The position numbers and the translations under genes are program-made. A stretch of DNA of 64,000 nucleotides from Vitrella brassicaformis CCMP3155 (taxonomy: Eukaryota > Protista > Chromerida): NCBI GenBank assembly GCA_001179505.1, contig CDMY01000113.1, positions 62,001 to 126,000 of the forward strand, written 5' to 3'. Under the pieces are notes generated by a model that was given only the letters and a program-made list of their open reading frames with translations, was not told the DNA's origin and searched no databases. Shown here one piece after another: positions 2,828 to 19,495 of the stretch; within the stretch, counting starts at the first letter, position 1, and each line of letters starts with the position of its first letter.

Positions 2828-3037
2828 TGGTGAGTGAGTGGGTGAATGAGTGAGTGAGATGGGTTGGTTGGCTGCTCTGAGGGATGAACGATAGATGGAT
2901 GTTGGACAAAATGAGCTTGATTCAAGTTACTCCATGATGGGTCAGGCACTCACAAACAGCGAACGGCCGTCTGTCTGGGGGGGACACCGTACACACATGT
3001 CGGCCACTGAGAAGCCTCTGTCGACATTCCGCATTCG

Positions 3038-4732
3038 TCACGGCCTCTTCTTGCGCATCTTCTCCAGCCTCTCCTCCTCCTGCACACATCACACAGGCCA
3101 CAGGATCGTACACGAGGCACGCAGGCGCATGCCACCCATTCGCAGACCACCCACCATGATCTTCTTGAGCTCCTCTGCGTCTTCCTTCTGGGCGATCTTG
3201 GCACTGCACACAACACACACACACACACACACACGAGGATGTCTGGATGTTTGTGTGGACGTCTGGAGTGTGATGTGATCTGGTGCGGTGTTAGTTAAGA
3301 GTGCGCACCTGCGTTTGTTTTCCGCCTCTTCCCGGCCGAAGTTGGACACCTGAATGTCACCGTCACGGCCTGCAGAGGCGTGAACCCATGACGACAGTCA
3401 GTCAAGGATGCTGGGGTGCTTTCCTCGGTTCGTTCGGTGCAGATGCATGTACCTTCGAATCTCCTCGGGTCGTATCCCGTCAGACTCCGCAGCTGCTTCT
3501 TCCAATCAGCTGCAAAAGCACACAGACACACACAGACATCCGTGCCTCTCATACCGCCCGCCCACCCAGCCACTCACTCACCATCCTCCTCGTGTCCGTC
3601 GACGATGAAGTCTGCCAGATCGTCATCGTCGTCATACTCGTCCTCGTACCCGTACCCGCCCCTCCGCGACCCCTCACGGCCATCACGCCCACATCTGGAG
3701 TCGCGATGAGGAGCAGCAGCAGGAGGGGGAGCACGTTGGCGATCGCGCCCCATCGGCCCACCACCAGCAGCACGACCTCCATGAGCCGGCCCTGACGCCC
3801 GGTAGCGGTCGTCTCGCCTGGACTGTGCCGGGGCGTCCCTGGCGCTTGGCTGTGTAGAGGGCCGGCCATGAGCCGGCGCGTTCTTGGAGACGGCCAACGG
3901 AGCATCTTCTCGAGAGCGTTTGCCGAGCATTGACGGCGGCCGAGAGGGGTGGGGGTCAGAGGGGCGACTGGCGGCAGATGGTGCGGGGGCGGTCCTCCTG
4001 TGGCCGGTGTCATTCTGGCGTGGGGCCTTTGGTGCAGATGGGGGAGCCGGCAGGGGGGTGGCCAGGACCTTCTTGCGCTCTGCACGAAGCTGCTGAAGCT
4101 GTCCAACACACATCCAACACACACGCACACAGAGAGAGAGATGAGAAGCCGTGTGTCAGGCATCGACCAGTGTGTTTGTGTCGGGTGGTGATTGACTGAC
4201 CTTTGCGCGCTTCTGTGTGTCGTTAGGTTCGTTGAGTAGGTCTTTGGTGATGAGATCCATCTCCTTGTCGATCTTGGCCACCTGTCCATCGATGCTCTTC
4301 TGGTGCTCCTTCTGACGCCTCTTCAGCTCCGCTGCCGGGTCCTGACCCACACACAGGCCACAGACACACGCAGAGACCGACGTCAGTCTAACTGCATGTT
4401 TATGATGCCGTGCCTGTGCCCGTGCATCAGCTCACCTCAGCCGTCTGACCCTTGTCCTTCTTCGACTTGCCACGCTTGCCGTCGCCATCTTCTGCAGCAT
4501 ACAGCAACGCGACACACACATAGCAGGAACCCTTTCCATCCATCCATCCGTCCACCCCCCCTCTCTCTCCCTCACCTGTGTCGTCTGGTTTGGCCCTCCG
4601 TAGGACGGGTATGATTTTGAAGGACTGAAGTTTCTGCTTGGGTTGCTCTGGCTCGAAGGACGGGAGGTTGACAGGGCCGCTCGATGGGGCCACCTTGGCC
4701 TTGCCAAGACCAGCAAGCACCGCCAGCGACAT
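3038..4732 (-). CDS. SPT2: SPT2 chromatin protein (histone chaperone), about 7 exons
   Basis: Spliced C-terminus DDDDDLADFIVDGHEEDGE-ADWKKQLRSLTGYDPRRFEGRDGDIQVSNFGREEAENKRSAKIAQKEDAEELKKIMEEERLEK matches the SPT2 domain pattern. ATG at 4732 (MSLAVLAGLGK), stop at 3038, GT-AG introns in consistent phase. Confidence 0.85.
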
Positions 4733-5146
4733 CAGCACACCCAATCACCGACCACGGGCAACAGACAGTCACAGTCGGGGGACTGACGGGAAAAAGGGAA
4801 AGAAAAGAAGTCAGCAGAGCCAATCTCGTGCTCTCTGCAGCATGCGCATGCAGTCTTTCCTTCGCCTGCCTCTCTTCGGTCAGGCAACTTGAAGGCAGGT
4901 GTTGTACGTGTCTTACCATTGGTCTTACGTGCCGAGCTTTGAAGGAAGAGCTTGTCCCTCAAATGTGCCGCAGAAAGCACAAAGCTTGTGCGGACTTCCG
5001 TGTAGGGTGGTTTTTAAGTTCGCATTTGGGCGGCTCCTCACTGCGAGCTAAACCCTGCCCTTTGAAACCCTGCCACCACTAGCCTTGTCAACGAGCCTTG
5101 TCCTGTCAACATCGTTCGAATTGGCGAATCTGCCGAAGCCACAGCT

Positions 5147-7021
5147 TTGCAGCGGTTGGACAGCATCATAGGTTCGTCCGCGGCGACGTCGGCCCGTCCG
5201 ACTCACTCTCCCTCTTCTCCCCCTTCCTCACCCTCACCCGCCCCTCATGCTGCCACATCCCATGCCACTGCACCAACAGCAGCAGCAGCAGCAGCGGCAT
5301 CGCCATCGAAACGAAGGCGGCTAAGGCTGTCGGCGGCCTCGCTGCGGTACTGTCTGTTTGTCATCTTCGGCGCGTGTTGGGTGGGGCTGCTGCTCGTCAC
5401 GGCCGTGCTTGCAGCGTCGCGATGGAATACGCCCAGTGTCCATGCGAGCGGCGGCCATGATGCATCCGAGGTGATGCTAGATGGGTCAGTGGGGGAGGGG
5501 ACTGTGCTTGTGCAGGAGGGGAAGGAGGGAAAGGTGTACAGTGATGATGGCCCTGGAGAGGTGGCTGGTGAGGCGCCGTCACAGTGGTGGCCATCGACGA
5601 TTTATGCGCTGGGCGACATCCACGGGGACGCCATGAACACACTGCTGCTGCTACACGCAGGTGGGAAGGGCAGACAGAAGAGGGGCTGGAGGTACAGATG
5701 TGAGCACACACGTGTGGATCTTGGTTGGTTGGTCGGTTGGTGGTGTGTGTCATGTCAATGCAATGCAGCTGGGGTGGTGAATTCGTCTGCACACTGGATA
5801 GCCAAAGACGCACTGCTCATCCAGGTGGAGAAATGGGCACGCTGAAGCTATTCCGCGATGAGCCCATAGCTGTTTTCCCCTCCCCTTGTTGTGTGTACTC
5901 AGACGGGTGACATTGTCGACCGCGGCCCCGACAGCCGCGAGCTGTACGAGTACTTCATGCTGCTCGACACGCAGGCGAGGCAGCAGGGCGGCAGGTTGGT
6001 GCAGCTCCTCGGCAACCATGAAGCCCTCAACCTCTGCAACGTGCTCGTGTAAGTCACAACGGGAGATGCTGTCCTGCGCATACAATCGTCACCTATGTGC
6101 GTGCAGGTACGTATCTCCTGCCGAGTTTGAGACGTACGGCGGCGCGGAGCAGAGGGCGTTGGAGTTCTCAGAGAGGGGAGAGATCGGAAGGAAGCTGCGC
6201 TCGCTAGGTCGGTCGGGGTGAATGGGTCAACGAGGAAACACAACACACACACACACACACACACAGACAAGACAGATCTTTCTCTTGCTCTCGTTTGTTG
6301 ACTGCAGATTCGGCGGTCGTCTACAATGACATCCGTAAGCCACAAACTGTCGCCCACACGGCATCCGTCATTTCATTCCCCCGCGTGTCGTGTCTGGATC
6401 TGCAGTGTTTGTCCACGCTGGTCTGCTGCCCAAGTTCGCCCAGCTGGGCCTCGACGCCGTCAACGAGGGCGTCAGGCGCGAGCTCGGGGCGGCCTGCAGC
6501 GTGGAGGGGTCGGTCTTCACCGGCGAGAGGGGGCCGCTGTGGGACCGTGTGCTGGCCACGTCGGCCGAGTCGCGGGCCTGCCCCCTGCTGGACCAGACTC
6601 TCGCTGCAGTGGCTGCGAAGCGGATGGTGGTCGGCCACACGGTGACGCAGTCGGGGCGCATTGAGCTGCGGTGTGACGGCAAGCTGGTCAAGATCGACGG
6701 GGGGCTGAGCAGATATATCATGAACAGGCCAGGTGCGTTGGTTAGTCCAGACGCGCTTACACGGCGCGCTTCACGGTCAGGTGGATCAGACGGGCGGTCA
6801 CGGTCACTTACGCTGATTGGTTTGTTGCAGTGCTGTTGGAGATCCGTGCTGGCGATGGTTGGTACCAGAAGTGGCTGGAAGTGAATGCGACGACCAGACA
6901 GCCCATCCTGCACACACAGCCTCTGCCCATCAGTGACGGTGACACGCAGGCAGCCGACGACGAGCAGCAGCGGCAGGGGAGTGCGGGGTCGGATGAGTCC
7001 ACCGTGATCCAGCTGATTTGA
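5147..7021 (+). CDS. Shewanella-like (SLP/Shelph) PPP-family metallophosphatase with N-terminal signal anchor; start codon uncertain
   Basis: Motifs GDIHG, GDIVDRG, GNHE, FVHAG, GPLWDR, MVVGHT and IDGG lie across 7 phase-consistent exons. The hydrophobic segment YCLFVIFGACWVGLLLVTAVLAA precedes the catalytic domain. Confidence 0.88.
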
Positions 7022-8778: not shown

Positions 8779-10032
8779 TTAGGTGAATGAGGGGAACGGG
8801 CGGGCCAGAGGGCGGTAGAACGGACGCTCACCTGACGCACACACACAGACAGAAATGGGATGCACACACACGCTCTCCCATTCCCTCCCTCCCTCCCTCC
8901 CTGTTGTTGTCGTGTCGGCTCACCGATGACTTCAGCGCATGGGTACGGTCCGCATCGCGTGAACCTTGCGGAGCCCAAGTCGTCTCTGCCGATGACGCGG
9001 GTCTCCTGAAGCTGTCGCTTCTTCTCCTTCTCGTACTCGACGGCGACGATCTCCTTGCCGTCGGCGTCGGTGAGGGTGTAGCCAGCCTTGGTGAGGGTGA
9101 TGACCATGTCGCCCTCGAGGTGCAGCTTGTACTCGTCGCCCTCCTTGAGTACATACGACACCCTAAACAGACCCTCGCTCTCCTCGCCAGTCTGTGTGAA
9201 CGCGCAAACGCATCAATCAAATTGTGTGCGTATGCATGTCTGTGTGTGTGTGTGTGTGTGGCTGTAGGGTTCCGTACCGGGATGACCAGTGTCTCGAGCT
9301 TCTCGAAGTCCCGCAGCGGCTGGCCGTAGAAGTCTGGCAGGGCGAACCTCTCCAAAGCCTCGGCCATGCCTACATCCAGACATGTCATGCCACATCCGCA
9401 CAGAGAGTGCTCTGTCTCGTCTGCATGCGTGTTGGTGTGTGCGTACGTGCGGGGTGTTTGGTGCCCCTGTCGATGACGACAGCCTGGCCGTCGACCTTGA
9501 TGTCCTTCATCACCTCCACTCCGGCAAGCACCAGGACGAACACGATGACCAGGGTGATGATCCACCCCACACCCATGCCGATCAACGCCCACCGAAGGGT
9601 CTTGTTGTGCTTGCGCTCGGACGTCAACTGCACACACACACACACAACACACACACACACACACACACACCAGGTTCCGCGTCAGTGACAGATCTGAGGC
9701 GAGACGGATTGTCTGTACCTGGCGGGCGGCCTCAGCGACCTCTTCGGCAGTGAAAGTCCCGTCGCCATTCTTGTCCCACGACTGCAGACACAACACACGA
9801 CACCATCATGTCTCTGTCTCTTGCCTGCCTCCCCATCTGTGTATCTCTGTGTGCACCACAACCCCCGCCAGTCTGTCTGCCTGTCTTCCTCCCCGCGCAT
9901 GTGACGTGCTGCGCTGTGTTGTGCTGCTGTGCTGACCTTGAGGAGCTGGACAATCCTGGTGCCGTCGTCGCCATCGACCCGGGACACAATGTTGGTGAAC
10001 TTCTCAGTGCGGCTCTGCGGAACGACTGACAT
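8779..10032 (-). CDS. EF-hand-containing single-pass membrane protein of unknown function
   Basis: Exons: MSVVPQSRTEKFTNIVSRVDGDDGTRIVQLLK / SWDKNGDGTFTAEEV (EF-hand loop) / TM segment WALIGMGVGWIITLVIVFVLVLAGV / luminal or extracellular beta-rich region. The last exon is tentative. Confidence 0.7.
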
Positions 10033-10749: not shown

Positions 10750-11507
10750 CTATTTGGTGGCTTTGGCAGCGGGCAGGTTGCCGACCACGCGGCGCAGCTT
10801 GGACAGAATCTGGGGGTTGGGGATCGCCTGCAACACCACAACCAACACACACATGGCATCGACGTGTCTGAGGAGGGCTGCCCTGTCTTTCATTGCTCAC
10901 CTTGCCGGCCTCATACTCGTTGATCACCGATGCCTTCTCGTTGATGCGCTGGTGACACAACACACCAGAAGGCACAAGATGCGCGTCACGCATCCACCAT
11001 CGCCTCGCCCTGTCCGCCCACCTGTGCGAGTTCGGCCTGCGTGAGTTTCTTGTCTAGCCGCGCCTGCTGGAGCGCCTTGGCGAAGTCGTGCGACACCCTG
11101 TCGTGCTTGAAATTCTCGGTCTCCTCCTCCAGCTTCTTGGCGCTGATACGCAACACACGCACACAGCGCACGACGCACAAGTGGATCAGTGAAGTACGGA
11201 TCAGTGGAAGAACGGATGTGACTTACTTGGACACGGGTTGGTGGGCATGGGCACGATTTTGGCCTCCCATGACTGCGTAAGACAACCACAGACACGCACA
11301 CCCGACCAAACGATGTGCCGCTGTTTTGCTTTCCGCGCGTGCGTGTGGATTCGGTCGCCGCTTACACTTCTTGACGGTATCGACTTCGTCTCCCGCCCGT
11401 CGCGCCTGGTTGACGACCTTGGCGTCCGACGCCTTGCTCCCAGATGGCTTTGTCTTAGACCACGTCACGGTCTCCCAGTCCTGGTGGCCCTGAGCTGGTC
11501 GCGACAT
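10750..11507 (-). CDS. MBF1: Multiprotein bridging factor 1
   Basis: QDWETVTW N-terminus; AKKLEEETE..HDRVSHDFAKALQQARLDKKLTQAELAQRINEKASVINEYEAGKAIPNPQILSKL (HTH); 5 exons. Confidence 0.95.
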
Positions 11508-11741
11508 CTTGAACCTCTCCAATCAACCCAATCACACTAGAACAGCTCGTGATTACGCGAAAACAAGGCTTTCTGTCGTCCTCCGCGCGATCACCTGCGA
11601 GCTTAAATTACGATTTGCGTTTTGGCTGGGATTCTCCCGATGTTACGTCGTTTCGAAGACAGACAGGCAGTATTCACATCAAGCCATTGCACGTCTTTCC
11701 GCTCACAGGCAACCAACCCTATCTATCAACCCGTCAGACAG

Positions 11742-14700
11742 TCAGCCGGACTGCCTGTCTGTCTGCTCCAGCAGCTGCGAGTAGTCCCTGCGGACCTGCC
11801 TCACGTGAGAACTCGCACTGATCCGGGCGAAATAGACCTACACGTACATGCACATGACACACATGGATGCACAGACCATGCATGTGTCTGTGTCCGACCT
11901 TGCAATGGTATGCGTCGTGGCAGGCCGCGCCCTCCCACGCCGACCCCGCACAGTGAGTGCAGAGACGATTCAACAAACCAAGGCGATCTTCAGAGGCACG
12001 AAGCCGACTGTACAACTGATCACACCGACATACACAGATGGACACAGCTTGCAAGCCCCATACGTGCATCCAGCCATCCATCCAGCCACTGCAAGTCATG
12101 TTGCATACCTTTAGGATAGCGCCTTGTGGGTCAGCTGCACATCGGTCGCACACTGATGGGGTGGCGGGGGCCCTCACAGGGGAGCACGAGCGGCGACCAT
12201 GGCCTGTGGATGCACGAGGGGTGGGGCGGGACGGCAAGGGGGGCGGCTTGACCAAGTCACTGTCTTCCTCTGCGTCGAGGTCGATGATTATCGGCTCGGA
12301 GGGGGCCTCCTTCTTGACCACCTCTGGCTCCTCCTCCTTGACTCGCTTGACGCCGCGTGGCCGTGGGGGTGAGGGCGCCTCGCTCTTGATCTCTCGCTTG
12401 ATCTCCGTCTTGACGGCAGCAGCAGGGGCACCAGCAGCAGCGGGGGCAGGGCGGCTTGGGCGGCCGTCTCTCAGCACACGCATCAGGCCCGACACGGCAC
12501 TGTCTGACACGCCCTCTTCCCCCTCCTCTGTCTTGACTGACACACCAACGCCGCCCCACTCCGTCTTCCTCCGCTTCCTTCTCCCGTCGCCCTCGCCCGC
12601 CGCCCTCCGACCTGCTGGCCGCATCGGTGCGCCGCAGACGGCACATGCACTGGCTGGGGCGAAGAACATGTCCATGGTGTTGGATGCCGATGGCGGGGCG
12701 ATGGGCGGGGCGTTGTACGAGGGAGGAGCAACAGCAGCTGCTGCAGCGACAGGCCCAGATGGATAGGGGACGAGTGACATCCCGGAGTTGCCATTGCTGG
12801 TTGGCGAGTCGTCCTCTTTGACGGGGGTGCGGGGCGACGGTGCAGGGGGCGGTGTGGGTGTGGGGTAGGTGCGCTTGACGGGCTTGGGCATCTGGTTGAA
12901 CCACCGCTCGACATTGACTTCGGGACCGATCAGAGCGAATAGCCGATCGATGGCCGGGATCATCTGCTTGGTGATGTAGTAGGTGGCGTTGAGATGCAGC
13001 AGAGGCTGACTCGCCCACGCCGCATACTGCTCCCTGCTGGCCTGAACCCAACATACACGTACCGACCAATGAACGTCACCACGACTGTCGCCCCCGGCAC
13101 CCTCACCTCAGGCTCGAGTGGCGTCAGCGGGCAGAGAGGCTTGGACGCTCCCTCTATTCTGCTGGGTGGCACCACCTGATCGATCAGCCGGCTGCCGGGC
13201 GGGCCATACGCCACGGCAAAGGGGATCCGTTCGCTCATCTGTGGGGTGGCGGTAGGGTCACTGGCGAGGGATGCGTATGCGACGACTGCCTGTGGGGGCA
13301 GGGTGTGTGCGGGGCCGCCTTGGTTGGCGGTGTAGGTGCCCAGCCGGACCTCTCGGTGGAAGATGACGTCATACAGATTCAACTGATGTGCAGAATAGAA
13401 AGAAGATGAGTGCACTTACGTGTTATCGGGTGCTGCGATTTCCTCACGTACCTCTGGGCCGCCTCGCAGGAGCGTTTGCCACTCATTGTAGAGGTACCTC
13501 TTCACCTGCAGACAAATATGCACAAAGAGGGCCTCGCCCACACCCCAATCACACCCACCCTGCCCACATTTCTCACCTGCGAGAGGTCTATGGTCTCGAA
13601 AATGATCCTCAGGCACTGCTCAAGCGCCCTCGACGCCACGGGGCACTGGTCCCTCCGCACATTCTCGATGCCCTTGGCGTCCAGCCGCGGTGCAGAGGTG
13701 GGTGTGTCGTAGGCGTAGCCCACATACCTCTTCTTGGACACCAGGCAGCAGGGCTGGTAGACCTTCTCCATCTTGAGCTCCATGGGCCGGGGGTTCTGCT
13801 CACTCACTTCTCGGGCGATCTCGCGCCCGATGACGAAGGCATCCTCTCTTGACCGACCCTCCACCAGCACAAAGAGTGAGTCCGTGTCGCCATACACCAC
13901 TCGCGCGCCCCACCTGAGGGCAAACGCAAGAGACCGTGTCGTTTTGCGTGTGGGCCTTTGGTCCGTGTTTGTGGGTTCTCACCTTGGATTCGCCTCGACA
14001 GTGTCTCTGGCCCTTTCCAGGGTGCGTCTGGCTGTCTGCACGATCGCGTCGGCGATCTCTCCGCATGGCATCCGACCAGAGAAGGAGGCTCCGGTGTAGC
14101 CGTAGGTCACGTTGCTGAACATCTTGAGCCCGAATTGACGATGGTTCAAGATGCGCTGGACAGACACACATGGAAACAATCATGTTTCCTTGCCGTCTGA
14201 TCCGCTTGTCTACCCACCTGCAGTCTCGGCTCCTTCATGGCCTTGTCGTGCAGCTTCATAGAGCTCTTGACCATCACACGGGTCCGCAGCACAGCCTCCA
14301 GCAGGGAGGGCAACACCCCACGCCTGACCCGTCTCGACACGAACACTGCCTCATTCGGCAAGATGTTGACACACCGCTCGTCGGCACCAGGCAGCCGCCC
14401 ACCTCCTCCCGCTCCCTCCTGCAGCCACTCGAACCTCTCCATCAGCTCGGCCATCATCTCGGGCGTGACGTCGAGCTCATGCACGCCGAATTTCTTGGTG
14501 AGGTTGACGAGTGGTGATGAGGGGTCGTGTCTGTCGCCCCTGAGGCGGCCCAGGCAGGTGGAGAAGCAGATGTTATAGGCGATGATGATGGACGGGTAGA
14601 GGGACTGGAAGTCGAGGACAATCACGGGGGACCAGTAGAAGTTCGACTCGGGCTCCATGACCAGCGGCAGACACTCCAAGGCCGTCTGCTGCGTCACCTG

Positions 14701-17700
14701 ATGGACGGATCAACACACGGAAATCACACATGTGACGAGTGTCCAGCAATCCATCCATCCATCCACACATTCCTATCCTTGCCTGTATCTTGGATGCGGA
14801 CAGCAGGACGTACCCCAGCGCGTGTGCCGCCCTACACAGCATCGCTTCCACCCGAAACTGACTCCCCCGGCTCAGCACGCTCCAGAAGTCGATCCCAAAG
14901 AGACGCGCAAACTCGGTGGTACGCGCAAGGAGGTCGGTGCTGTCCATCAGCCCCACCACCAGCCGCACACACCGCATGACGTAGCGCAGCGCAAAGTGAC
15001 GGTATGGGTGCCGGTCGGGCTCGTCTTGGTCTGTGTGGTGCCACCATGAAGAGAGCGTGAATGGGGGGAAGTGGGGGACCGTCGTGCCGAGGAGCGTCTG
15101 GGCGAGGGCGTGGAGGGAGTACTGTGTAGTCTTGACCTCAGACCTTAGCGTGCGCCACAAGTTGATGACGATCCGGCCGCCGAGCGTCACGCCACCTGCA
15201 CGCATCAAGGCACCAACCACATGCAGGCAGGCAGGCAGGCAGAACGATAACTGATTCTTCCGAAAAGATCTTCTGAGAGCTCACCTGATGCAAGTGTGGG
15301 CATGAAGTTCATCCATGGCGCCTCAGACGGATCCAGCAGGTGCGAGTCCACACCGCTCGATGCCGGCACGAGAGGGCCGCTGGTCGCTCGGGGCTTCGGC
15401 TTCTGCCCTGTTGAGGCGGCAGGGACGATCGCCCCACCAGTGGATTGCCGCCGCTGCTGTTGCTGCGTGACTTTGGGGGGCGGCAGAGGTGCCTGGGATG
15501 GAGGGGGGTTGAGCAGACGTGACAGCTGAGTGGTGATGGTGTTGTAGCCCAGGTACTGCGCCCGACGGATGAAGTACCTGAAGCCCAGATCAAGGAAAGC
15601 GCATGGATGTACACATGAGTGTGCCGTGTGCCAGTCATGGTGCCCTCCCTCACCCGATGGATTTGCTCTGCACCTCAAAGCCGACCAGGATAGACGGATC
15701 GAAGTCATGGAAGAGCCGCACCACCGCGTCAATAAGCTCCCCCTCGCTTGCCACCCAGTCCATCGCCCCATATCGCCCCCATCCCTCCACTGGCAGCCCA
15801 TCCTCGGTCACGACGATGCCGCCGTGCCTGTCGCCCTCGCCCTCCTCACCCAGTCTCTCATCCCGCTTCACCCACAGCACCGCCACCATGGCGTCCTTCG
15901 CAGGGTCACTAGACGAAGAAGCGCCGCCCGTGCAGTCAGCCAACACCTCCACGGCCAATAGAGTGCCGAACGACAGCCGATCGGGCGATGGGGGGGCGAT
16001 GGCTGGTTTTGTGTAAGGCTGGTCCTCGGCTGATTGGATTGGGTCGTCCTCGAGCTCGCCGGGGACGATGTGAGGGGGAGGGGGGCCGATCTTCCTGTCA
16101 GCTGCTGCACCCTCCTTGGCTTGCTTGTTGTCCTCTGGTTTGTCGTCGACCACGAAAACAATCCGCCCATAGCTGTCCATCGTCGTAGTGGCCTTCTCAA
16201 GGCCCTGCTTCGCCATCTCCTCCTTGCCCCTTGTCTCCATGTAGTCGTCGACGGCCTCTCGCACAGTGGGCGGGGGGATCCCGTAGACAAAGCGACTCGT
16301 CCACACCCGGCTGACGGCCATGCTCTCGCTCTCGTCATTGGCGGCCAGGACAGTCATGTGTGGGTTGCTGCTGACGAGCCCGACGCCCCTCTTGGCCTGC
16401 TGGGGGCGGAATGGAGGAGGGGCTACTGGGGTTGGCAGCGGACGGATGGTCTGTGGCAGCGCTGACGGGGGGATGTCTGCCGCGTCAGAGTAGTGGGGGT
16501 GCTGGGACGGGGAGGACCCGGGCAGAGGGGCGGCAGCAGCAGCTGATGCACTGGCAGCGGCAGTATGGGACGATGCTTGCATCTTAACATCTTCTGACGC
16601 CCCGCTGTCGGCTTCCTGCTGCATCTGTTGGTGCCAGGGAGTAGAGGAGGAGGCGGGAGCTGCAGCGGCTTCTCGGCACGCCGACAGGACGTCCTCCAGG
16701 TGGCTGCGGAACTCGCCATTCATCAGCTCCTCGGCGACGTGAACACGCCTGAAGCCACACAGAAGCAGTAAACATGTGTGTGCGGGTGTAGCGTCTTCTC
16801 TCCATGTGTCTGAGTTACCTGTCGAAAGGATCGTTCTTGGCCGTGTCGAAGTCTTCATCGCGCGGCGGCTCCATGCCCCTCTCGGTGCGCCGCGAAATCT
16901 CATCCTGCACACACACGAGGGAGGGACAACACAGGTGAGCAGTCGATGGATGCATCAAGGACACCCAAGCACGACGCACCTGCCACAGAGCATCGAGCGA
17001 CTCGGCCACTGGCGGGGCACAGCTGACATCGAAGTCAAAGGGCACCTTATCGAGCTCGCCCGCCTCCATTCTCCTCCTGCCCTCCATCCACTTGGCCCAC
17101 TCAACGTTCAATATATCGCCGGCACGCACGTCAGCCTCCAGCTCGCACCGCGTCTGTCGTGCCATCGATGACACACGAATCCCCCGCACGTGCCGTGTCC
17201 AGTAGCGGATAGGCGAGTGTGCTGCTGACGAACTCTCATATTGGATTGGTGGGGAGAAGGAGGGGCGAGAGGGGAGAGGGGGGCGGAATGACACGCGTGA
17301 CGGGTCGGCGTGCAGATCGTCCATGCCGCGGAGGTTGTGTTCGGCCAGGAACTGCAACAGGTGGGGCAGGTGAACCTCATAGGGCTGGAAGGCATGGTTC
17401 ATCACTGCGCCACGATGGAATAGAGCCGCTACCTGTGACACACACACACAGACAGAGAAAGGAGCAGATTTCTGGTGGCCATTGCTCTGCCCACCGCTTT
17501 CGTTGCCTCACCCGATGGAGATGAGCGGGATTGACACACGACACCTTGACGAACCGTCTGAACTCCCCGTGATACCCATAGATCCCACGCCGCCACACCA
17601 CCGCCAGATCAAAGATGCATGCGCCCCGGCCTCCTTCCTTCGTGTAAATGCTCTCCGCCTCTCGCGCCATCCTCTGGAGGAACGCATGCCGCCGGTTGGA

Positions 17701-17940
17701 TGAGTCGGCAACTTCATCACTCATGGCGTCGGTCAGCTGGACATAGAAGAAGGGCAAGAAGGAGTGGACATGCAGGGCACACATCTGGCCGGACGGGCGA
17801 AGAGGACCATAGATGCGGACAATGGGCACGAGCTGGAGCTGTTTCTGCGTCAGAGGTGACGACGCAGGATCAAGATCACGCTGTGGAGGCGCCATAGTTG
17901 TGTCCATCGACACGATGCGAATGCTGAACCGCGAATCCAT
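11742..17940 (-). CDS. REV3: DNA polymerase zeta catalytic subunit (family B)
   Basis: N-terminal [21 protein letters not shown] and [13 protein letters not shown]; region [21 protein letters not shown]; region [27 protein letters not shown]; region [12 protein letters not shown]; KKRYVG; C-terminal CysA/CysB cysteines. Confidence 0.96.
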
Positions 17941-18121: not shown

Positions 18122-18974
18122 ATGTCGTGTCCGGTTCAAGGCAAGGAGGCGCAGGCACCGCCAAGCGGCTGCCCTGTGCAGCACAGCACCACAACCAAGA
18201 CCAGTGGCTGCCCGGTGCAGCATGATGCCGCAAACAAGCCCAGCGGATGCCCTGTCCAGCACGATGCACCGAGCGCCAAGGGCGACGTCCCTGCTGACAA
18301 CAAGGAGCGCTTTGCTGACCATCCCCTCGCCACCTCCACTCCCCCATCATCGCCCACCACCAAAGGCCCTCAGTCGGAGGACCAGCTGAGCAATGACCGG
18401 CAGAAGGCCACCATCCCGTCTGTGTCCGGCGACTGGTACTACCCGTCCGAGCGTCAGTTCTTCAAGGCGACTCTTGCCAAGGGCCACGACGACGTGATGC
18501 CGAGCGACATGCCGATGGTGGTGGCCATCCACAACGCCGTCAACGAGCAGTGCTGGCAGCGCATCATGGAGTACGAGAAGATGCACGAGGACGAGTGCAG
18601 CACGCCCAAGCTGCTGCGGTTCATCGGGCGGCCCGACCAGATGAGCGTCAAGGCCAAGCTCATGACCGCACTCATGGGCTACCACAAGCCTTTCGACAGA
18701 CACGACTGGTTCGTGGACAGATGTGGCAAACAGGTACATGTGCATGTCTGTGAGGAAGCCGCGGACGGACACACGAGAGGGATATCTGTCTGTGCATGTC
18801 CATGTGCCCGTGGGGTGCATGTGTCAGGTTCGCTATGTGGTAGATTTCTACGAGGGGGCCCCGTCCAAGTACTCGCCGGTGTCGATATACGTGGATGCGC
18901 GGCCGGAGGTGGGGCTGGAGGGGTGCATGGACAGGACAAAGATGTTCCTCAAGAGAACCAACCTCATCTCATAG
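18122..18974 (+). CDS. HCCS: Holocytochrome c synthase (cytochrome c/c1 heme lyase)
   Basis: Four CPV heme-regulatory motifs; [50 protein letters not shown], DARP; one intron at ~18734-18827. Confidence 0.96.
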
Positions 18975-19495
18975 AGCAGAGCAAGGCAGGCAGCCGAGGC
19001 AATAAGGCAGACAGGCAGTGGGTTTTTGGTGTTGGCTGATGTCAGCCAGCTCGTGTGTGTGCGCGTGAGCTCTGCTGTGTGTATGACATGGCACTCAATC
19101 GACTAAGTTTGTGTCTGTGAACGCCATGAGGTGGAGGTGCGGCTAAGTGAATCGTAACATTTGTCAAGCCCGGTAGAGCAGGGGGCTCAGTATGGTAGGT
19201 ATTCTCAAGTTTGAGACGTCATGCGGTGGGTGATTCGAGAAGCGCACGGGGGCATAAATAAATGCCATTCGTATGTTGTGTGCGTGCCATCGCAGGCAGA
19301 CACACCCACTCGTCGCAATCACGCCACGTACGGATAAATTTCAATAAATCTATGGACCTCCGTGCCCTGTCCTGCCATCCCAATCAATCTGCACATGTGG
19401 CAACCTGCCGACTCAACTGCACGTCCCTCCAGTCACTCAAGATGGATGTAAGAAAAACACCCACAGGCAACCCATGAATGCATGTATGTATGTCG

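What the first reader, a model, noticed from the sequence alone, without database searches (positions are those of the whole stretch)
12139..12645. REV3 CysA zinc finger split by a 161-aa insert packed with SUMO sites, a SIM and an NLS
Seen in sequence: the CysA half-sites CAVC (12634-12645) and CDRC (12139-12150) are separated by 483 nt of open, microsatellite-free, coding-like sequence. In typical family-B CysA fingers the spacer is only about 10 aa. The insert has six psi-K-x-E SUMO consensus sites (VKTE x2, [16 protein letters not shown]), a textbook SIM (IIIDLD followed by acidic AEEDSD) and a basic RRKRRK NLS. Inference: a lineage-specific SUMO hub in the Pol zeta C-terminal domain, next to the region that binds the shared accessory (Pol delta B) subunit, could couple translesion synthesis to SUMO signalling.
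Basis: partly seen in the sequence, partly recalled or inferred. Interest (0 to 1): 0.72.

Follow-up and report, generated by a model that had tools for sequence, protein, structure and literature searches.

The report
Expanded zinc-finger loop in Vitrella REV3
The translesion DNA polymerase zeta gene of the alga Vitrella brassicaformis really does carry an expressed, disordered 161-residue loop inside its first C-terminal zinc finger, packed with a nuclear-import-like signal and SUMO-type motifs. Long loops at this site are shared with apicomplexan relatives, and the SUMO role is still only a prediction.

Summary
On the minus strand, CAVC (12645-12634) and CDRC (12150-12139) are separated by 483 nt (161 aa) within one exon of the REV3 gene of Vitrella brassicaformis CCMP3155 (public model CEL92814.1, 1733 aa).

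- **Exonic:** A spliced transcript contig removes five flanking GT-AG introns but runs unbroken through the insert.
- **CysA assignment:** In a 52-sequence CTD alignment all eight CysA/CysB cysteines are invariant. CDRC lies the canonical 28 aa before CysB.
- **Disorder:** AlphaFold gives a confident CTD core and first knuckle, and a structureless loop (pLDDT 37-57).
- **Not unique in position:** Of 153 REV3s with a scorable CTD, 147 have 8-20 aa spacers. Eimeria (99), Rhytidocystis (54) and an unidentified relative (123) have long ones. These form one clade with Vitrella and share a CX2CX9CX5C CysB.
- **Lineage-specific in sequence:** Nothing in 1.84 billion representatives aligns to the insert.
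- **Motif enrichment:** Six psi-K-x-E sites against 0.19 expected (P<1e-5). The SIM has P of about 0.002 and the basic run about 0.004.
- **Limits:** Three SUMO sites come from one 12-nt tandem repeat. The SUMO cluster is absent from relatives' loops. Basic clusters recur there.

The SUMO-hub function is plausible but untested. This is a modest new variant of a known enzyme.

The parts
11742..17907 (-). REV3 (DNA polymerase zeta catalytic subunit) gene of Vitrella brassicaformis, from start codon to stop codon. Public model P0001 = CEL92814.1, 1733 aa.
   Evidence: Pfam REV3_N, POL3_N and DNA_pol_B on the exons. The exon is 100% identical to P0001 residues 1353-1663. Organism and accession. 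Start and stop coordinates.
12109..13041 (-). Single 933-nt exon (311 codons) holding the end of the thumb, a Pro/Ala-rich linker, and both CysA half-sites with the 161-aa loop.
   Evidence: Transcript contig record 16 of run X5 is spliced at 13042-13106 and 12016-12108 and is continuous across 12109-13040. Spliced contigs of run X1 cover 12109-12520.
12634..12645 (-). CysA first half-site CAVC (P0001 1485-1488).
   Evidence: Invariant columns C131 and C134 in alignment A1. pLDDT 88.
12151..12633 (-). 161-aa disordered CysA loop insert (P0001 1489-1649).
   Evidence: Open frame with GC3 0.74, like the flanking exon at 0.735; verified introns have GC 0.46-0.60. pLDDT 37-57 with no secondary structure. 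No relative aligns to it in 1.84e9 representatives.
12565..12582 (-). RRKRRK basic cluster, a monopartite NLS-like motif.
   Evidence: It is the only run of four or more basic residues in the whole protein, and one of only two K[KR]x[KR] matches, both in the loop. Shuffle P=0.004.
12526..12537 (-). psi-K-x-E site 1: VKTE followed by EGEEG (acidic downstream).
12379..12414 (-). Three adjacent psi-K-x-E sites, [12 protein letters not shown], encoded by a 12-nt tandem repeat.
   Evidence: TRF period 12, 2.8 copies, 12379-12413.
12307..12342 (-). psi-K-x-E sites VKEE (12342-12331) and VKKE (12318-12307).
12256..12291 (-). SIM-like motif IIIDLD followed by the acidic tail AEEDSD.
   Evidence: Shuffle P=0.002. 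The pattern [VIL][VI]DL plus an acidic tail occurs only 3 times in 260,664 residues of 210 fetched proteins, nearly all REV3s. One of the three is in the closest relative, P0089, 92 aa before its CysA.
12139..12150 (-). CysA second half-site CDRC (P0001 1650-1653).
   Evidence: Invariant columns C296 and C299 in A1. It lies 28 aa before CysB, as in nearly all homologues. The Pfam zf-C4pol match starts just before it.
11902..11961 (-). CysB motif CTHC-x9-C-x5-C in the next exon (11899-12015). This is the presumed [4Fe-4S] and B-subunit binding site.
   Evidence: Invariant cysteines in A1. The function is inferred from yeast (PMC3526297).
12153..12611 (-). Candidate in-frame GT..AG pair (459 nt) whose removal would give CX2CX8CX2C. 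It is not seen spliced.
   Evidence: The transcript contig passes both sites without a break. About 0.7 such end-to-end in-frame pairs are expected by chance (my count on the sequence).

Best explanation
The stretch is a genuine, expressed, intrinsically disordered 161-residue expansion of the loop between the two Cys-x2-Cys knuckles of the CysA zinc ribbon. It sits in the C-terminal domain of REV3 of Vitrella brassicaformis.

The four CysA cysteines and the CysB cluster are intact, so the loop most likely projects from a normally folded CTD. Long CysA loops are a trait of the apicomplexan plus chromerid REV3 clade. Their sequences turn over quickly, and in Vitrella the loop grew partly by short tandem duplications.

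The Vitrella loop carries the protein's only strong basic NLS-like cluster. It also carries six SUMO-consensus lysines and a PIAS/RNF4-type SIM 5-80 residues downstream of them.

My best mechanistic reading is that the loop is a flexible targeting and regulatory tether:
- The basic cluster serves nuclear import. I put this at about 50%; it recurs in relatives' loops.
- The SIM recruits SUMO-charged Ubc9 or SUMOylated partners, so that the neighbouring lysines are modified. That would tune Pol zeta recruitment or turnover at damaged forks, as the SIM plus acceptor-lysine tail does in yeast Srs2. I put this at about 30-35%.

Shown: sequence, exon status, CysA assignment, disorder prediction, motif enrichment, clade distribution. 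Inferred: metal binding, import, SUMOylation, SUMO binding.
For: - Gene identity.
- Exon status: a spliced contig spans the insert, and the public model keeps it.
- CysA assignment: all eight cysteines are invariant in 52 CTDs, and the CysA-to-CysB spacing is 28 aa.
- Structure: the CTD core has pLDDT 87-97 and the first knuckle 88, while the loop has 37-57.
- Fold match: the model matches yeast Rev3 CTD 8tlt_A at Z 9.0. It matches yeast Pol3 7kc0_A at Z 8.1 over a range covering both half-sites.
- Clade trait: spacers of 54, 99, 123 and 161 aa occur only in proteins that form a 100/99-supported clade and share CX2CX9CX5C.
- Motif enrichment.
- Six of the protein's seven psi-K-x-E sites are in the loop.
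- The only basic clusters of P0001 and of the Eimeria fragment lie in the loop.
- A SIM-like [VI]IDL-acidic motif also occurs near CysA in the closest relative.
- Growth by slippage.
- Analogy: in Srs2 the SIM is needed for SUMOylation of nearby lysines and for binding SUMO-PCNA (PMC3439891).
Against: - No psi-K-x-E site occurs in the loops of Eimeria, Rhytidocystis or P0089, so the SUMO cluster is not conserved.
- Three sites come from one 12-nt repeat.
- Yeast rev3 CysA mutants show no defect in mutagenesis, Pol31 binding or PCNA stimulation (PMC3526297). Rev3 lacking the whole CTD keeps most functions (PMC9498848). The site may therefore be under weak constraint.
- There is no proteomic, binding or localisation evidence.
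- Contigs cannot exclude a rare spliced isoform.
Confidence: 0.55

Rival explanations
1. The insert is a tolerated, functionally neutral low-complexity expansion. CysA of Pol zeta is under weak constraint, so its loop accumulates slippage-derived K/E/V/P-rich sequence. On this view the SUMO, SIM and NLS look-alikes are by-products that are not used.
For: - Four short tandem arrays lie inside the insert.
- Loop sequences are not alignable between relatives.
- psi-K-x-E sites are absent from the other long loops.
- Yeast CysA mutants have no phenotype (PMC3526297).
Against: - Enrichment survives collapsing the tandem and local-composition shuffles.
- Three different motif classes co-occur.
- The loop holds the only basic cluster in the protein, as it does in Eimeria.
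- All four CysA cysteines stay invariant across the long-loop clade, so the module is not decaying.
Confidence: 0.3
2. The insert is an exitron, an alternatively spliced in-frame internal intron. Splicing from the GT at 12611 to the AG at 12153 would remove 153 codons and give a canonical CX2CX8CX2C finger. The long form would then be one of two isoforms.
For: - The in-frame GT..AG pair sits almost exactly at the insert's ends.
- The donor context AG|GTCGGA is identical to the verified donor at 11898.
- The acceptor has a C-rich tract followed by CAG.
Against: - Transcript contig record 16 of X5 (depth 26) passes both sites without a break, while five neighbouring introns are removed. X1 contigs also cover 12109-12520.
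- At 459 nt it would be 5-7 times longer than the verified introns of 61-93 nt.
- GC3 of 0.74 and AAG/GAG codon use look like coding sequence.
- About 0.7 such end-to-end in-frame pairs are expected by chance.
- Relatives' transcripts also keep their long loops (Rhytidocystis isoforms).
Confidence: 0.07
3. The periodic (psi-K-x-E)n block and the adjacent Pro-rich LVKPPPLPS segment are protein-docking elements unrelated to SUMO. They could be a short amphipathic helix, or an extra REV7-binding-like motif that contacts another Pol zeta subunit.
For: - LVKPPPLPS fits the phi-phi-x-P-x-x-x-p-P pattern. That pattern also occurs at the expected REV7-binding region, at residues 412 and 557. The consensus is recalled from memory.
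- The psi-K-x-E block has a four-residue periodicity.
Against: - AlphaFold predicts no helix there, and pLDDT is below 55.
- The motif consensus was not checked against a curated model.
- No equivalent is seen in relatives' loops.
Confidence: 0.08

Closest known systems
Canonical REV3/Rev3 C-terminal domain (yeast Rev3, human REV3L): a CysA zinc ribbon plus a CysB [4Fe-4S] site that binds Pol31/POLD2
   Same: - Eight invariant cysteines and a 28-aa CysA-to-CysB spacing.
- The helical CTD core superposes on yeast Rev3 8tlt_A at Z 9.0, rmsd 2.3 A over 80 residues.
- Pfam zf-C4pol is matched.
   Different: - The CysA spacer is 161 aa instead of 8-20.
- CysB is CX2CX9CX5C instead of ...X4C.
- Pfam aligns only from the second half-site onward.
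REV3 of apicomplexans and relatives: Eimeria tenella and E. necatrix (CDJ36961.1, CDJ65780.1), the Rhytidocystis pertsovi transcriptome, and an unidentified Logan contig from SRR26360272
   Same: - They form one clade with Vitrella in a palm/thumb tree, support 100/99.
- Their CysA loops are expanded to 99, 54 and 123 aa.
- They share the CX2CX9CX5C CysB.
- Basic clusters occur in or beside the loop in Eimeria and in the Logan protein.
   Different: - The loop sequences are unrelated.
- They have no psi-K-x-E sites.
- The SIM-like motif of the Logan protein lies before CysA rather than inside it.
Yeast Srs2 C-terminal tail: a SIM plus nearby SUMO-acceptor lysines, which binds SUMO-PCNA
   Same: A disordered segment of a replication-fork protein combines a SIM with acceptor lysines tens of residues away. 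In Srs2 the SIM is required for SUMOylation and for SUMO-PCNA binding (PMC3439891).
   Different: - It is a different protein family.
- No PCNA-specific site was found beside the Vitrella SIM.
- The Vitrella module sits inside a zinc-ribbon loop.
- Nothing has been tested experimentally.

Membership tests
REV3 / DNA polymerase zeta catalytic subunit (family B) | N-terminal REV3_N and POL3_N domains | tested here: met
   PF24065 at E 6.9e-11 and PF24055 at E 7.8e-10 on the first exon ORF.
REV3 / DNA polymerase zeta catalytic subunit (family B) | Family-B polymerase domain with motif A (DxxSLYPS) and motif C (YGDTDS) | tested here: met
   PF00136 at E 3.5e-30 and 2.5e-25. The motifs are at P0001 residues 941 and 1137.
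REV3 / DNA polymerase zeta catalytic subunit (family B) | Closer to Pol zeta than to Pol delta, alpha or epsilon | tested here: met
   The best-scoring homologues carrying names are almost all annotated Pol zeta or REV3, at 47-53% identity over the polymerase domain. The only PDB sequence hits are yeast Rev3.
REV3 / DNA polymerase zeta catalytic subunit (family B) | REV7-binding motif(s) between the N-terminal and polymerase domains | tested here: inconclusive
   Pattern matches TIRPLPTPV (412) and YTKPAIAPP (557) were found. The consensus is from memory and there is no binding test.
CysA zinc ribbon of eukaryotic family-B polymerases | Four cysteines as two C-x2-C knuckles, aligned with homologues | tested here: met
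   C131, C134, C296 and C299 are invariant in 52 CTDs.
CysA zinc ribbon of eukaryotic family-B polymerases | Short spacer between the knuckles (8-20 aa in 147 of 153 scorable REV3s) | tested here: not met
   The spacer is 161 aa. Only clade relatives approach it, at 54-123 aa.
CysA zinc ribbon of eukaryotic family-B polymerases | Fixed distance to CysB | tested here: met
   28 aa, as in nearly all homologues.
CysA zinc ribbon of eukaryotic family-B polymerases | Metal coordination by the four cysteines | not testable with these tools
   Only indirect support: both knuckles have pLDDT 87-88, and the Pol3 superposition spans both.
SUMO acceptor / SIM module | psi-K-x-E consensus in an accessible, disordered segment | tested here: met
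   Six sites in a region with pLDDT 37-57. Enrichment P<1e-5.
SUMO acceptor / SIM module | SIM: a hydrophobic core of 3-4 V/I/L residues flanked by acidic or Ser residues | tested here: met
   IIIDLD plus AEEDSD. Shuffle P=0.002. The motif definition is from established knowledge.
SUMO acceptor / SIM module | Conservation of the motifs in orthologues | tested here: not met
   There are no psi-K-x-E sites in the other long loops. Only a relocated SIM-like motif is found in P0089.
SUMO acceptor / SIM module | Actual SUMO conjugation and non-covalent SUMO binding | not testable with these tools
   This needs in vitro SUMOylation, pull-downs or proteomics.
Classical monopartite NLS | K-(K/R)-x-(K/R) basic cluster in an exposed region | tested here: met
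   RRKRRK is the sole strong basic cluster of the protein. Import itself was not tested.
Spliceosomal intron / exitron | Removal from mature mRNA at GT..AG | tested here: not met
   Contigs of two RNA data sets retain the stretch while neighbouring introns are removed. Rare isoforms are not excluded.

The most novel reading that the evidence does not exclude
The Vitrella CysA loop is a working SUMO switch on Pol zeta. Its SIM docks the polymerase to SUMOylated PCNA or SUMOylated repair factors and drives multi-site SUMOylation of the six adjacent lysines. This would give chromerids a SUMO-based route of Pol zeta recruitment or removal, built into the subunit-binding CTD. The expanded CysA loop of the whole apicomplexan plus chromerid clade would then be a general platform for such regulatory motifs, including the NLS.
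Probability: 0.15. Interest if true: 0.65.

Novelty: new variant of a known kind. Interest (0 to 1): 0.35.

Why it matters
Pol zeta is the main mutagenic extender polymerase of eukaryotes, and how it is recruited and restrained is still debated. The role of its CysA zinc ribbon is unknown, since yeast mutants have no phenotype.

A clade-wide expansion of exactly this loop shows that the ribbon can serve as a scaffold for a long disordered arm. In one lineage that arm carries an NLS-like cluster, six SUMO-consensus lysines and a SIM.

If the motifs are used, this would be a built-in link between SUMO signalling and translesion synthesis. The clade includes important parasites such as Eimeria and other apicomplexans.

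If they are not used, the case still illustrates how slippage-driven disordered inserts acquire linear motifs in weakly constrained loops. In either case it affects annotation only slightly, because the public gene model is already correct.

Tried and rejected
**Intron reading.** I found an in-frame GT..AG pair (12611..12153) that would restore CX2CX8CX2C. I rejected it as the main form because spliced transcript contigs retain the stretch, its codon statistics look coding, and such a pair is expected by chance.

**Word-index searches of the CTD.**
- P0001 region 1340-1733 returned only self and one weak hit; low-complexity words probably swamped the candidates.
- P0001 region 1645-1733 returned only self.
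- As a result, Chromera, Toxoplasma, Plasmodium, dinoflagellate and perkinsid REV3 CTDs could not be collected.

**PDB sequence search with the exon.** It aligned only the thumb end to yeast Rev3, not CysA.

**Foldseek against PDB.** It gave no significant match; Pol delta and Pol zeta ranked top at E 0.8-2.9. The VIA re-alignment was more informative, but Z 8-9 is shared with unrelated helical hairpins.

**Direct loop comparison with P0089.** There was no similarity beyond the CTD core.

**Spliced model.** The exon was searched by reference, and the full-length protein used was the database's own P0001.
Full report
**What is there**

The minus strand between about 17907 and 11742 encodes a family-B polymerase. 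It has REV3_N, POL3_N and DNA_pol_B domains. One exon, translated by reference (window:12109-13041:-, 311 aa), is 100% identical to residues 1353-1663 of a 1733-aa public protein. That protein is CEL92814.1 / A0A0G4EBX7 of Vitrella brassicaformis CCMP3155. Its polymerase domain is 47-53% identical to annotated Pol zeta catalytic subunits of plants and green algae. The only PDB sequence hits are yeast Rev3. The gene is REV3.

**Observation check**

- CAVC lies at 12645-12634 and CDRC at 12150-12139, with 483 nt (161 codons) of open frame between them.
- The loop contains RRKRRK, six psi-K-x-E sites (VKTE twice, [16 protein letters not shown]), and IIIDLD followed by AEEDSD.
TRF finds four short tandem arrays in the insert. 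One of them is a 12-nt unit in 2.8 copies that encodes the three adjacent sites [12 protein letters not shown].

**Exon or intron?**

I also noticed an in-frame GT (12611) .. AG (12153) pair whose removal would give a canonical CX2CX8CX2C finger.

Public runs were laid on 11500-13900. A 2112-nt contig of run X5 (2013 study) skips five GT-AG introns: 11838-11898, 12016-12108, 13042-13106, 13383-13451 and 13506-13576. It is therefore RNA-derived. It runs unbroken from 12109 to 13040, straight through the insert and through both candidate splice sites.

Contigs of a second data set (X1) are spliced at the first two introns and cover 12109-12520.

Further points agree with exon status:
- The public gene model has the same junctions and keeps the insert.
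- GC3 of the insert (0.74) equals that of the flanking exon (0.735), while verified introns have GC 0.46-0.60 and are 61-93 nt long.

The stretch is exonic in the dominant transcript. Contigs cannot exclude a rare spliced isoform.

**Are these really the two halves of CysA?**

- In a MAFFT alignment of 52 REV3 C-terminal regions, the invariant columns include exactly C131, C134, C296, C299 (CysA) and C328, C331, C341, C347 (CysB) of the Vitrella sequence.
- CDRC lies 28 residues before CysB, as in nearly all homologues.
- Pfam zf-C4pol matches only from just before CDRC onward, profile positions 9-70 of 70. This is what a split first knuckle predicts.
- AlphaFold2 with this alignment gives pLDDT 87-97 for the CTD core, 88 for the first knuckle, and 37-57 with no secondary structure for the loop.
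- The model's core superposes on the yeast Rev3 CTD (8tlt_A, Z 9.0, rmsd 2.3 A, 80 residues).
- A superposition on yeast Pol3 (7kc0_A, Z 8.1) spans model residues 129-370, which covers both half-sites.
- These Z values are not far above unrelated helical hairpins, so this is supportive only.

**How unusual is it?**

A CTD could be scored in 153 of the 206 proteins fetched. In 147 of them the CysA spacer is 8-20 aa, with a mode of 10. The exceptions (identities) are:

| Spacer | Source |
|---|---|
| 41 aa | Actinomortierella (a fungus) |
| 54 aa | Rhytidocystis pertsovi, from a transcriptome |
| 99 aa | Eimeria tenella and E. necatrix |
| 123 aa | P0089, an unidentified organism, Logan contig from SRR26360272 |
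| 161 aa | Vitrella |

- The four long-loop lineages, leaving aside the 41-aa fungal case, also share a CX2CX9CX5C CysB, where the others have X4.
- In a maximum-likelihood tree of the palm and thumb, with the CTD excluded, they form one clade with 100/99 support. Within it, Vitrella joins P0089 (96/89) and Rhytidocystis joins Eimeria (99/97). The branches are long, so the internal order is tentative.
- An expanded CysA loop is therefore a trait of the apicomplexan plus chromerid REV3 lineage, not of Vitrella alone.
- The sequence of the loop is lineage-specific. In an exhaustive HMMER scan of 1.84 billion representatives, nothing but the protein itself aligns beyond query residue 157, about 20 residues into the loop. 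A direct comparison with P0089 aligns only the CTD core.

**Are the motifs more than chance?**

- Composition-matched shuffles of the 161 residues give 0.19 psi-K-x-E sites on average. None of 100,000 reached six.
- With shuffling confined to local blocks of 20-80 residues the mean is 0.19-0.35, and P(>=4) is at or below 1e-4.
- With the tandem collapsed to one unit, four sites remain at P=1e-5.
- Six of the seven psi-K-x-E sites of the whole 1733-aa protein lie in the loop.
- Among all open segments of at least 100 aa in six frames of the 64-kb window (53,187 aa, 13 sites), this is the only cluster.
- The SIM-like motif has P=0.002 and the six-residue basic run P=0.004.
- RRKRRK is the only run of four or more basic residues in the protein. 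The only two K[KR]x[KR] matches are both in the loop. The only such cluster of the Eimeria fragment is likewise in its loop, and P0089 has its basic clusters in and just before its loop.
- The pattern [VIL][VI]DL plus an acidic tail occurs three times in 260,664 residues of 210 fetched proteins, nearly all REV3s. One is in the Vitrella loop, one is in P0089 92 residues before its CysA, and one is elsewhere in an unrelated lineage.
- By contrast, the loops of Eimeria, Rhytidocystis and P0089 contain no psi-K-x-E site.

**Interpretation**

Shown:
- The loop is a real, expressed and predicted-disordered expansion inside an otherwise intact CysA/CysB domain.
- The insertion site is shared by a clade.
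- The loop is built partly by slippage.
- It has a highly non-random concentration of three kinds of short linear motif.

Inferred:
- The zinc ribbon still forms, with the loop projecting from it.
- The basic cluster acts in nuclear import. This is the most conserved feature of the long loops; I put it at about 50%.
- The SIM and the lysines form a SUMO module. I put this at about 30-35%.

The closest worked example of such a module at the fork is the tail of yeast Srs2. There a SIM is needed both for SUMOylation of nearby lysines and for binding SUMO-PCNA, and the two roles compete (PMC3439891).

Two published results argue against a strong functional claim. Yeast rev3 CysA mutants bind Pol31-Pol32, support UV mutagenesis and respond to PCNA like wild type, whereas CysB mutants do not (PMC3526297). 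Rev3 lacking the entire CTD retains most functions (PMC9498848). The CysA loop may therefore simply be a permissive place for disordered sequence. That neutral reading is the main rival, at about 30%.

The exitron reading (about 7%) and a SUMO-independent docking element (about 8%) are minor rivals. The docking element might include the REV7-binding-like LVKPPPLPS.

**Verdict**

The gene identity, the CysA assignment, exon status and motif enrichment all hold. 'Lineage-specific SUMO hub' is only partly supported. The site of expansion is clade-wide, the SUMO cluster is Vitrella-specific and partly a tandem duplication, and no modification evidence exists. This is a new variant of a known enzyme and of moderate interest.

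Exons were searched by reference, and the database's own full-length protein was used.

Noticed in passing
P0001 residues 1682-1701 (window 11961-11902) and relatives P0058, P0089, P0095: The apicomplexan plus chromerid REV3 clade has a CysB spacing of CX2CX9CX5C. Nearly all other REV3s surveyed have four residues between the last two cysteines.
   Followed up: partly
window 12229-12255 (-), P0001 1615-1623: LVKPPPLPS, directly after the SIM, fits the REV7-binding-type pattern phi-phi-x-P-x-x-x-p-P. That pattern also occurs at residues 412 (TIRPLPTPV) and 557 (YTKPAIAPP), in the usual REV7-binding region. The consensus is recalled from memory.
   Followed up: no
window 12661-12684 (-), P0001 1472-1479: SNTMDMFF lies just before CysA and aligns with the conserved T-I-D-x-Y-Y motif of other REV3s (A1 consensus). 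It resembles a degenerate PIP box (x-x-x-M-x-x-F-F).
   Followed up: no
L001 (Logan SRR26360272 contig, 6202 nt), gene 2925-6155: An unidentified organism encodes the closest REV3 relative. It has a 123-aa CysA loop and a strong SIM-like EVIDLAISSPEEEE 92 aa before CysA. An upstream ORF (546-2837) looks like the N-terminal half of the same gene, separated by a short retained intron or break.
   Followed up: partly
window 18122-19039 (+): A cytochrome c/c1 heme lyase gene (PF01265, E 5.6e-38) has four CPV(Q) heme-regulatory-type repeats at its N-terminus. It is divergent from REV3, with only about 215 nt between the two start codons, so a shared bidirectional promoter is possible.
   Followed up: partly
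window 11223-11522 (-): An MBF1 (multiprotein bridging factor 1) exon (PF08523, E 1.3e-9) lies just downstream of the REV3 stop codon on the same strand. RNA contigs there are much deeper than those of REV3.
   Followed up: no
window 12306-12326 and 12414-12449: Short GC-rich, (GCA)n-like pieces of the insert also match other contigs of the same genome assemblies (loose ends and extra pieces). They are simple low-complexity repeats, not copies of the insert.
   Followed up: partly
window 9200-9700, both strands: (CA/GT)n microsatellites give spurious VCVCVC and THTHTH open reading frames in several frames.
   Followed up: no
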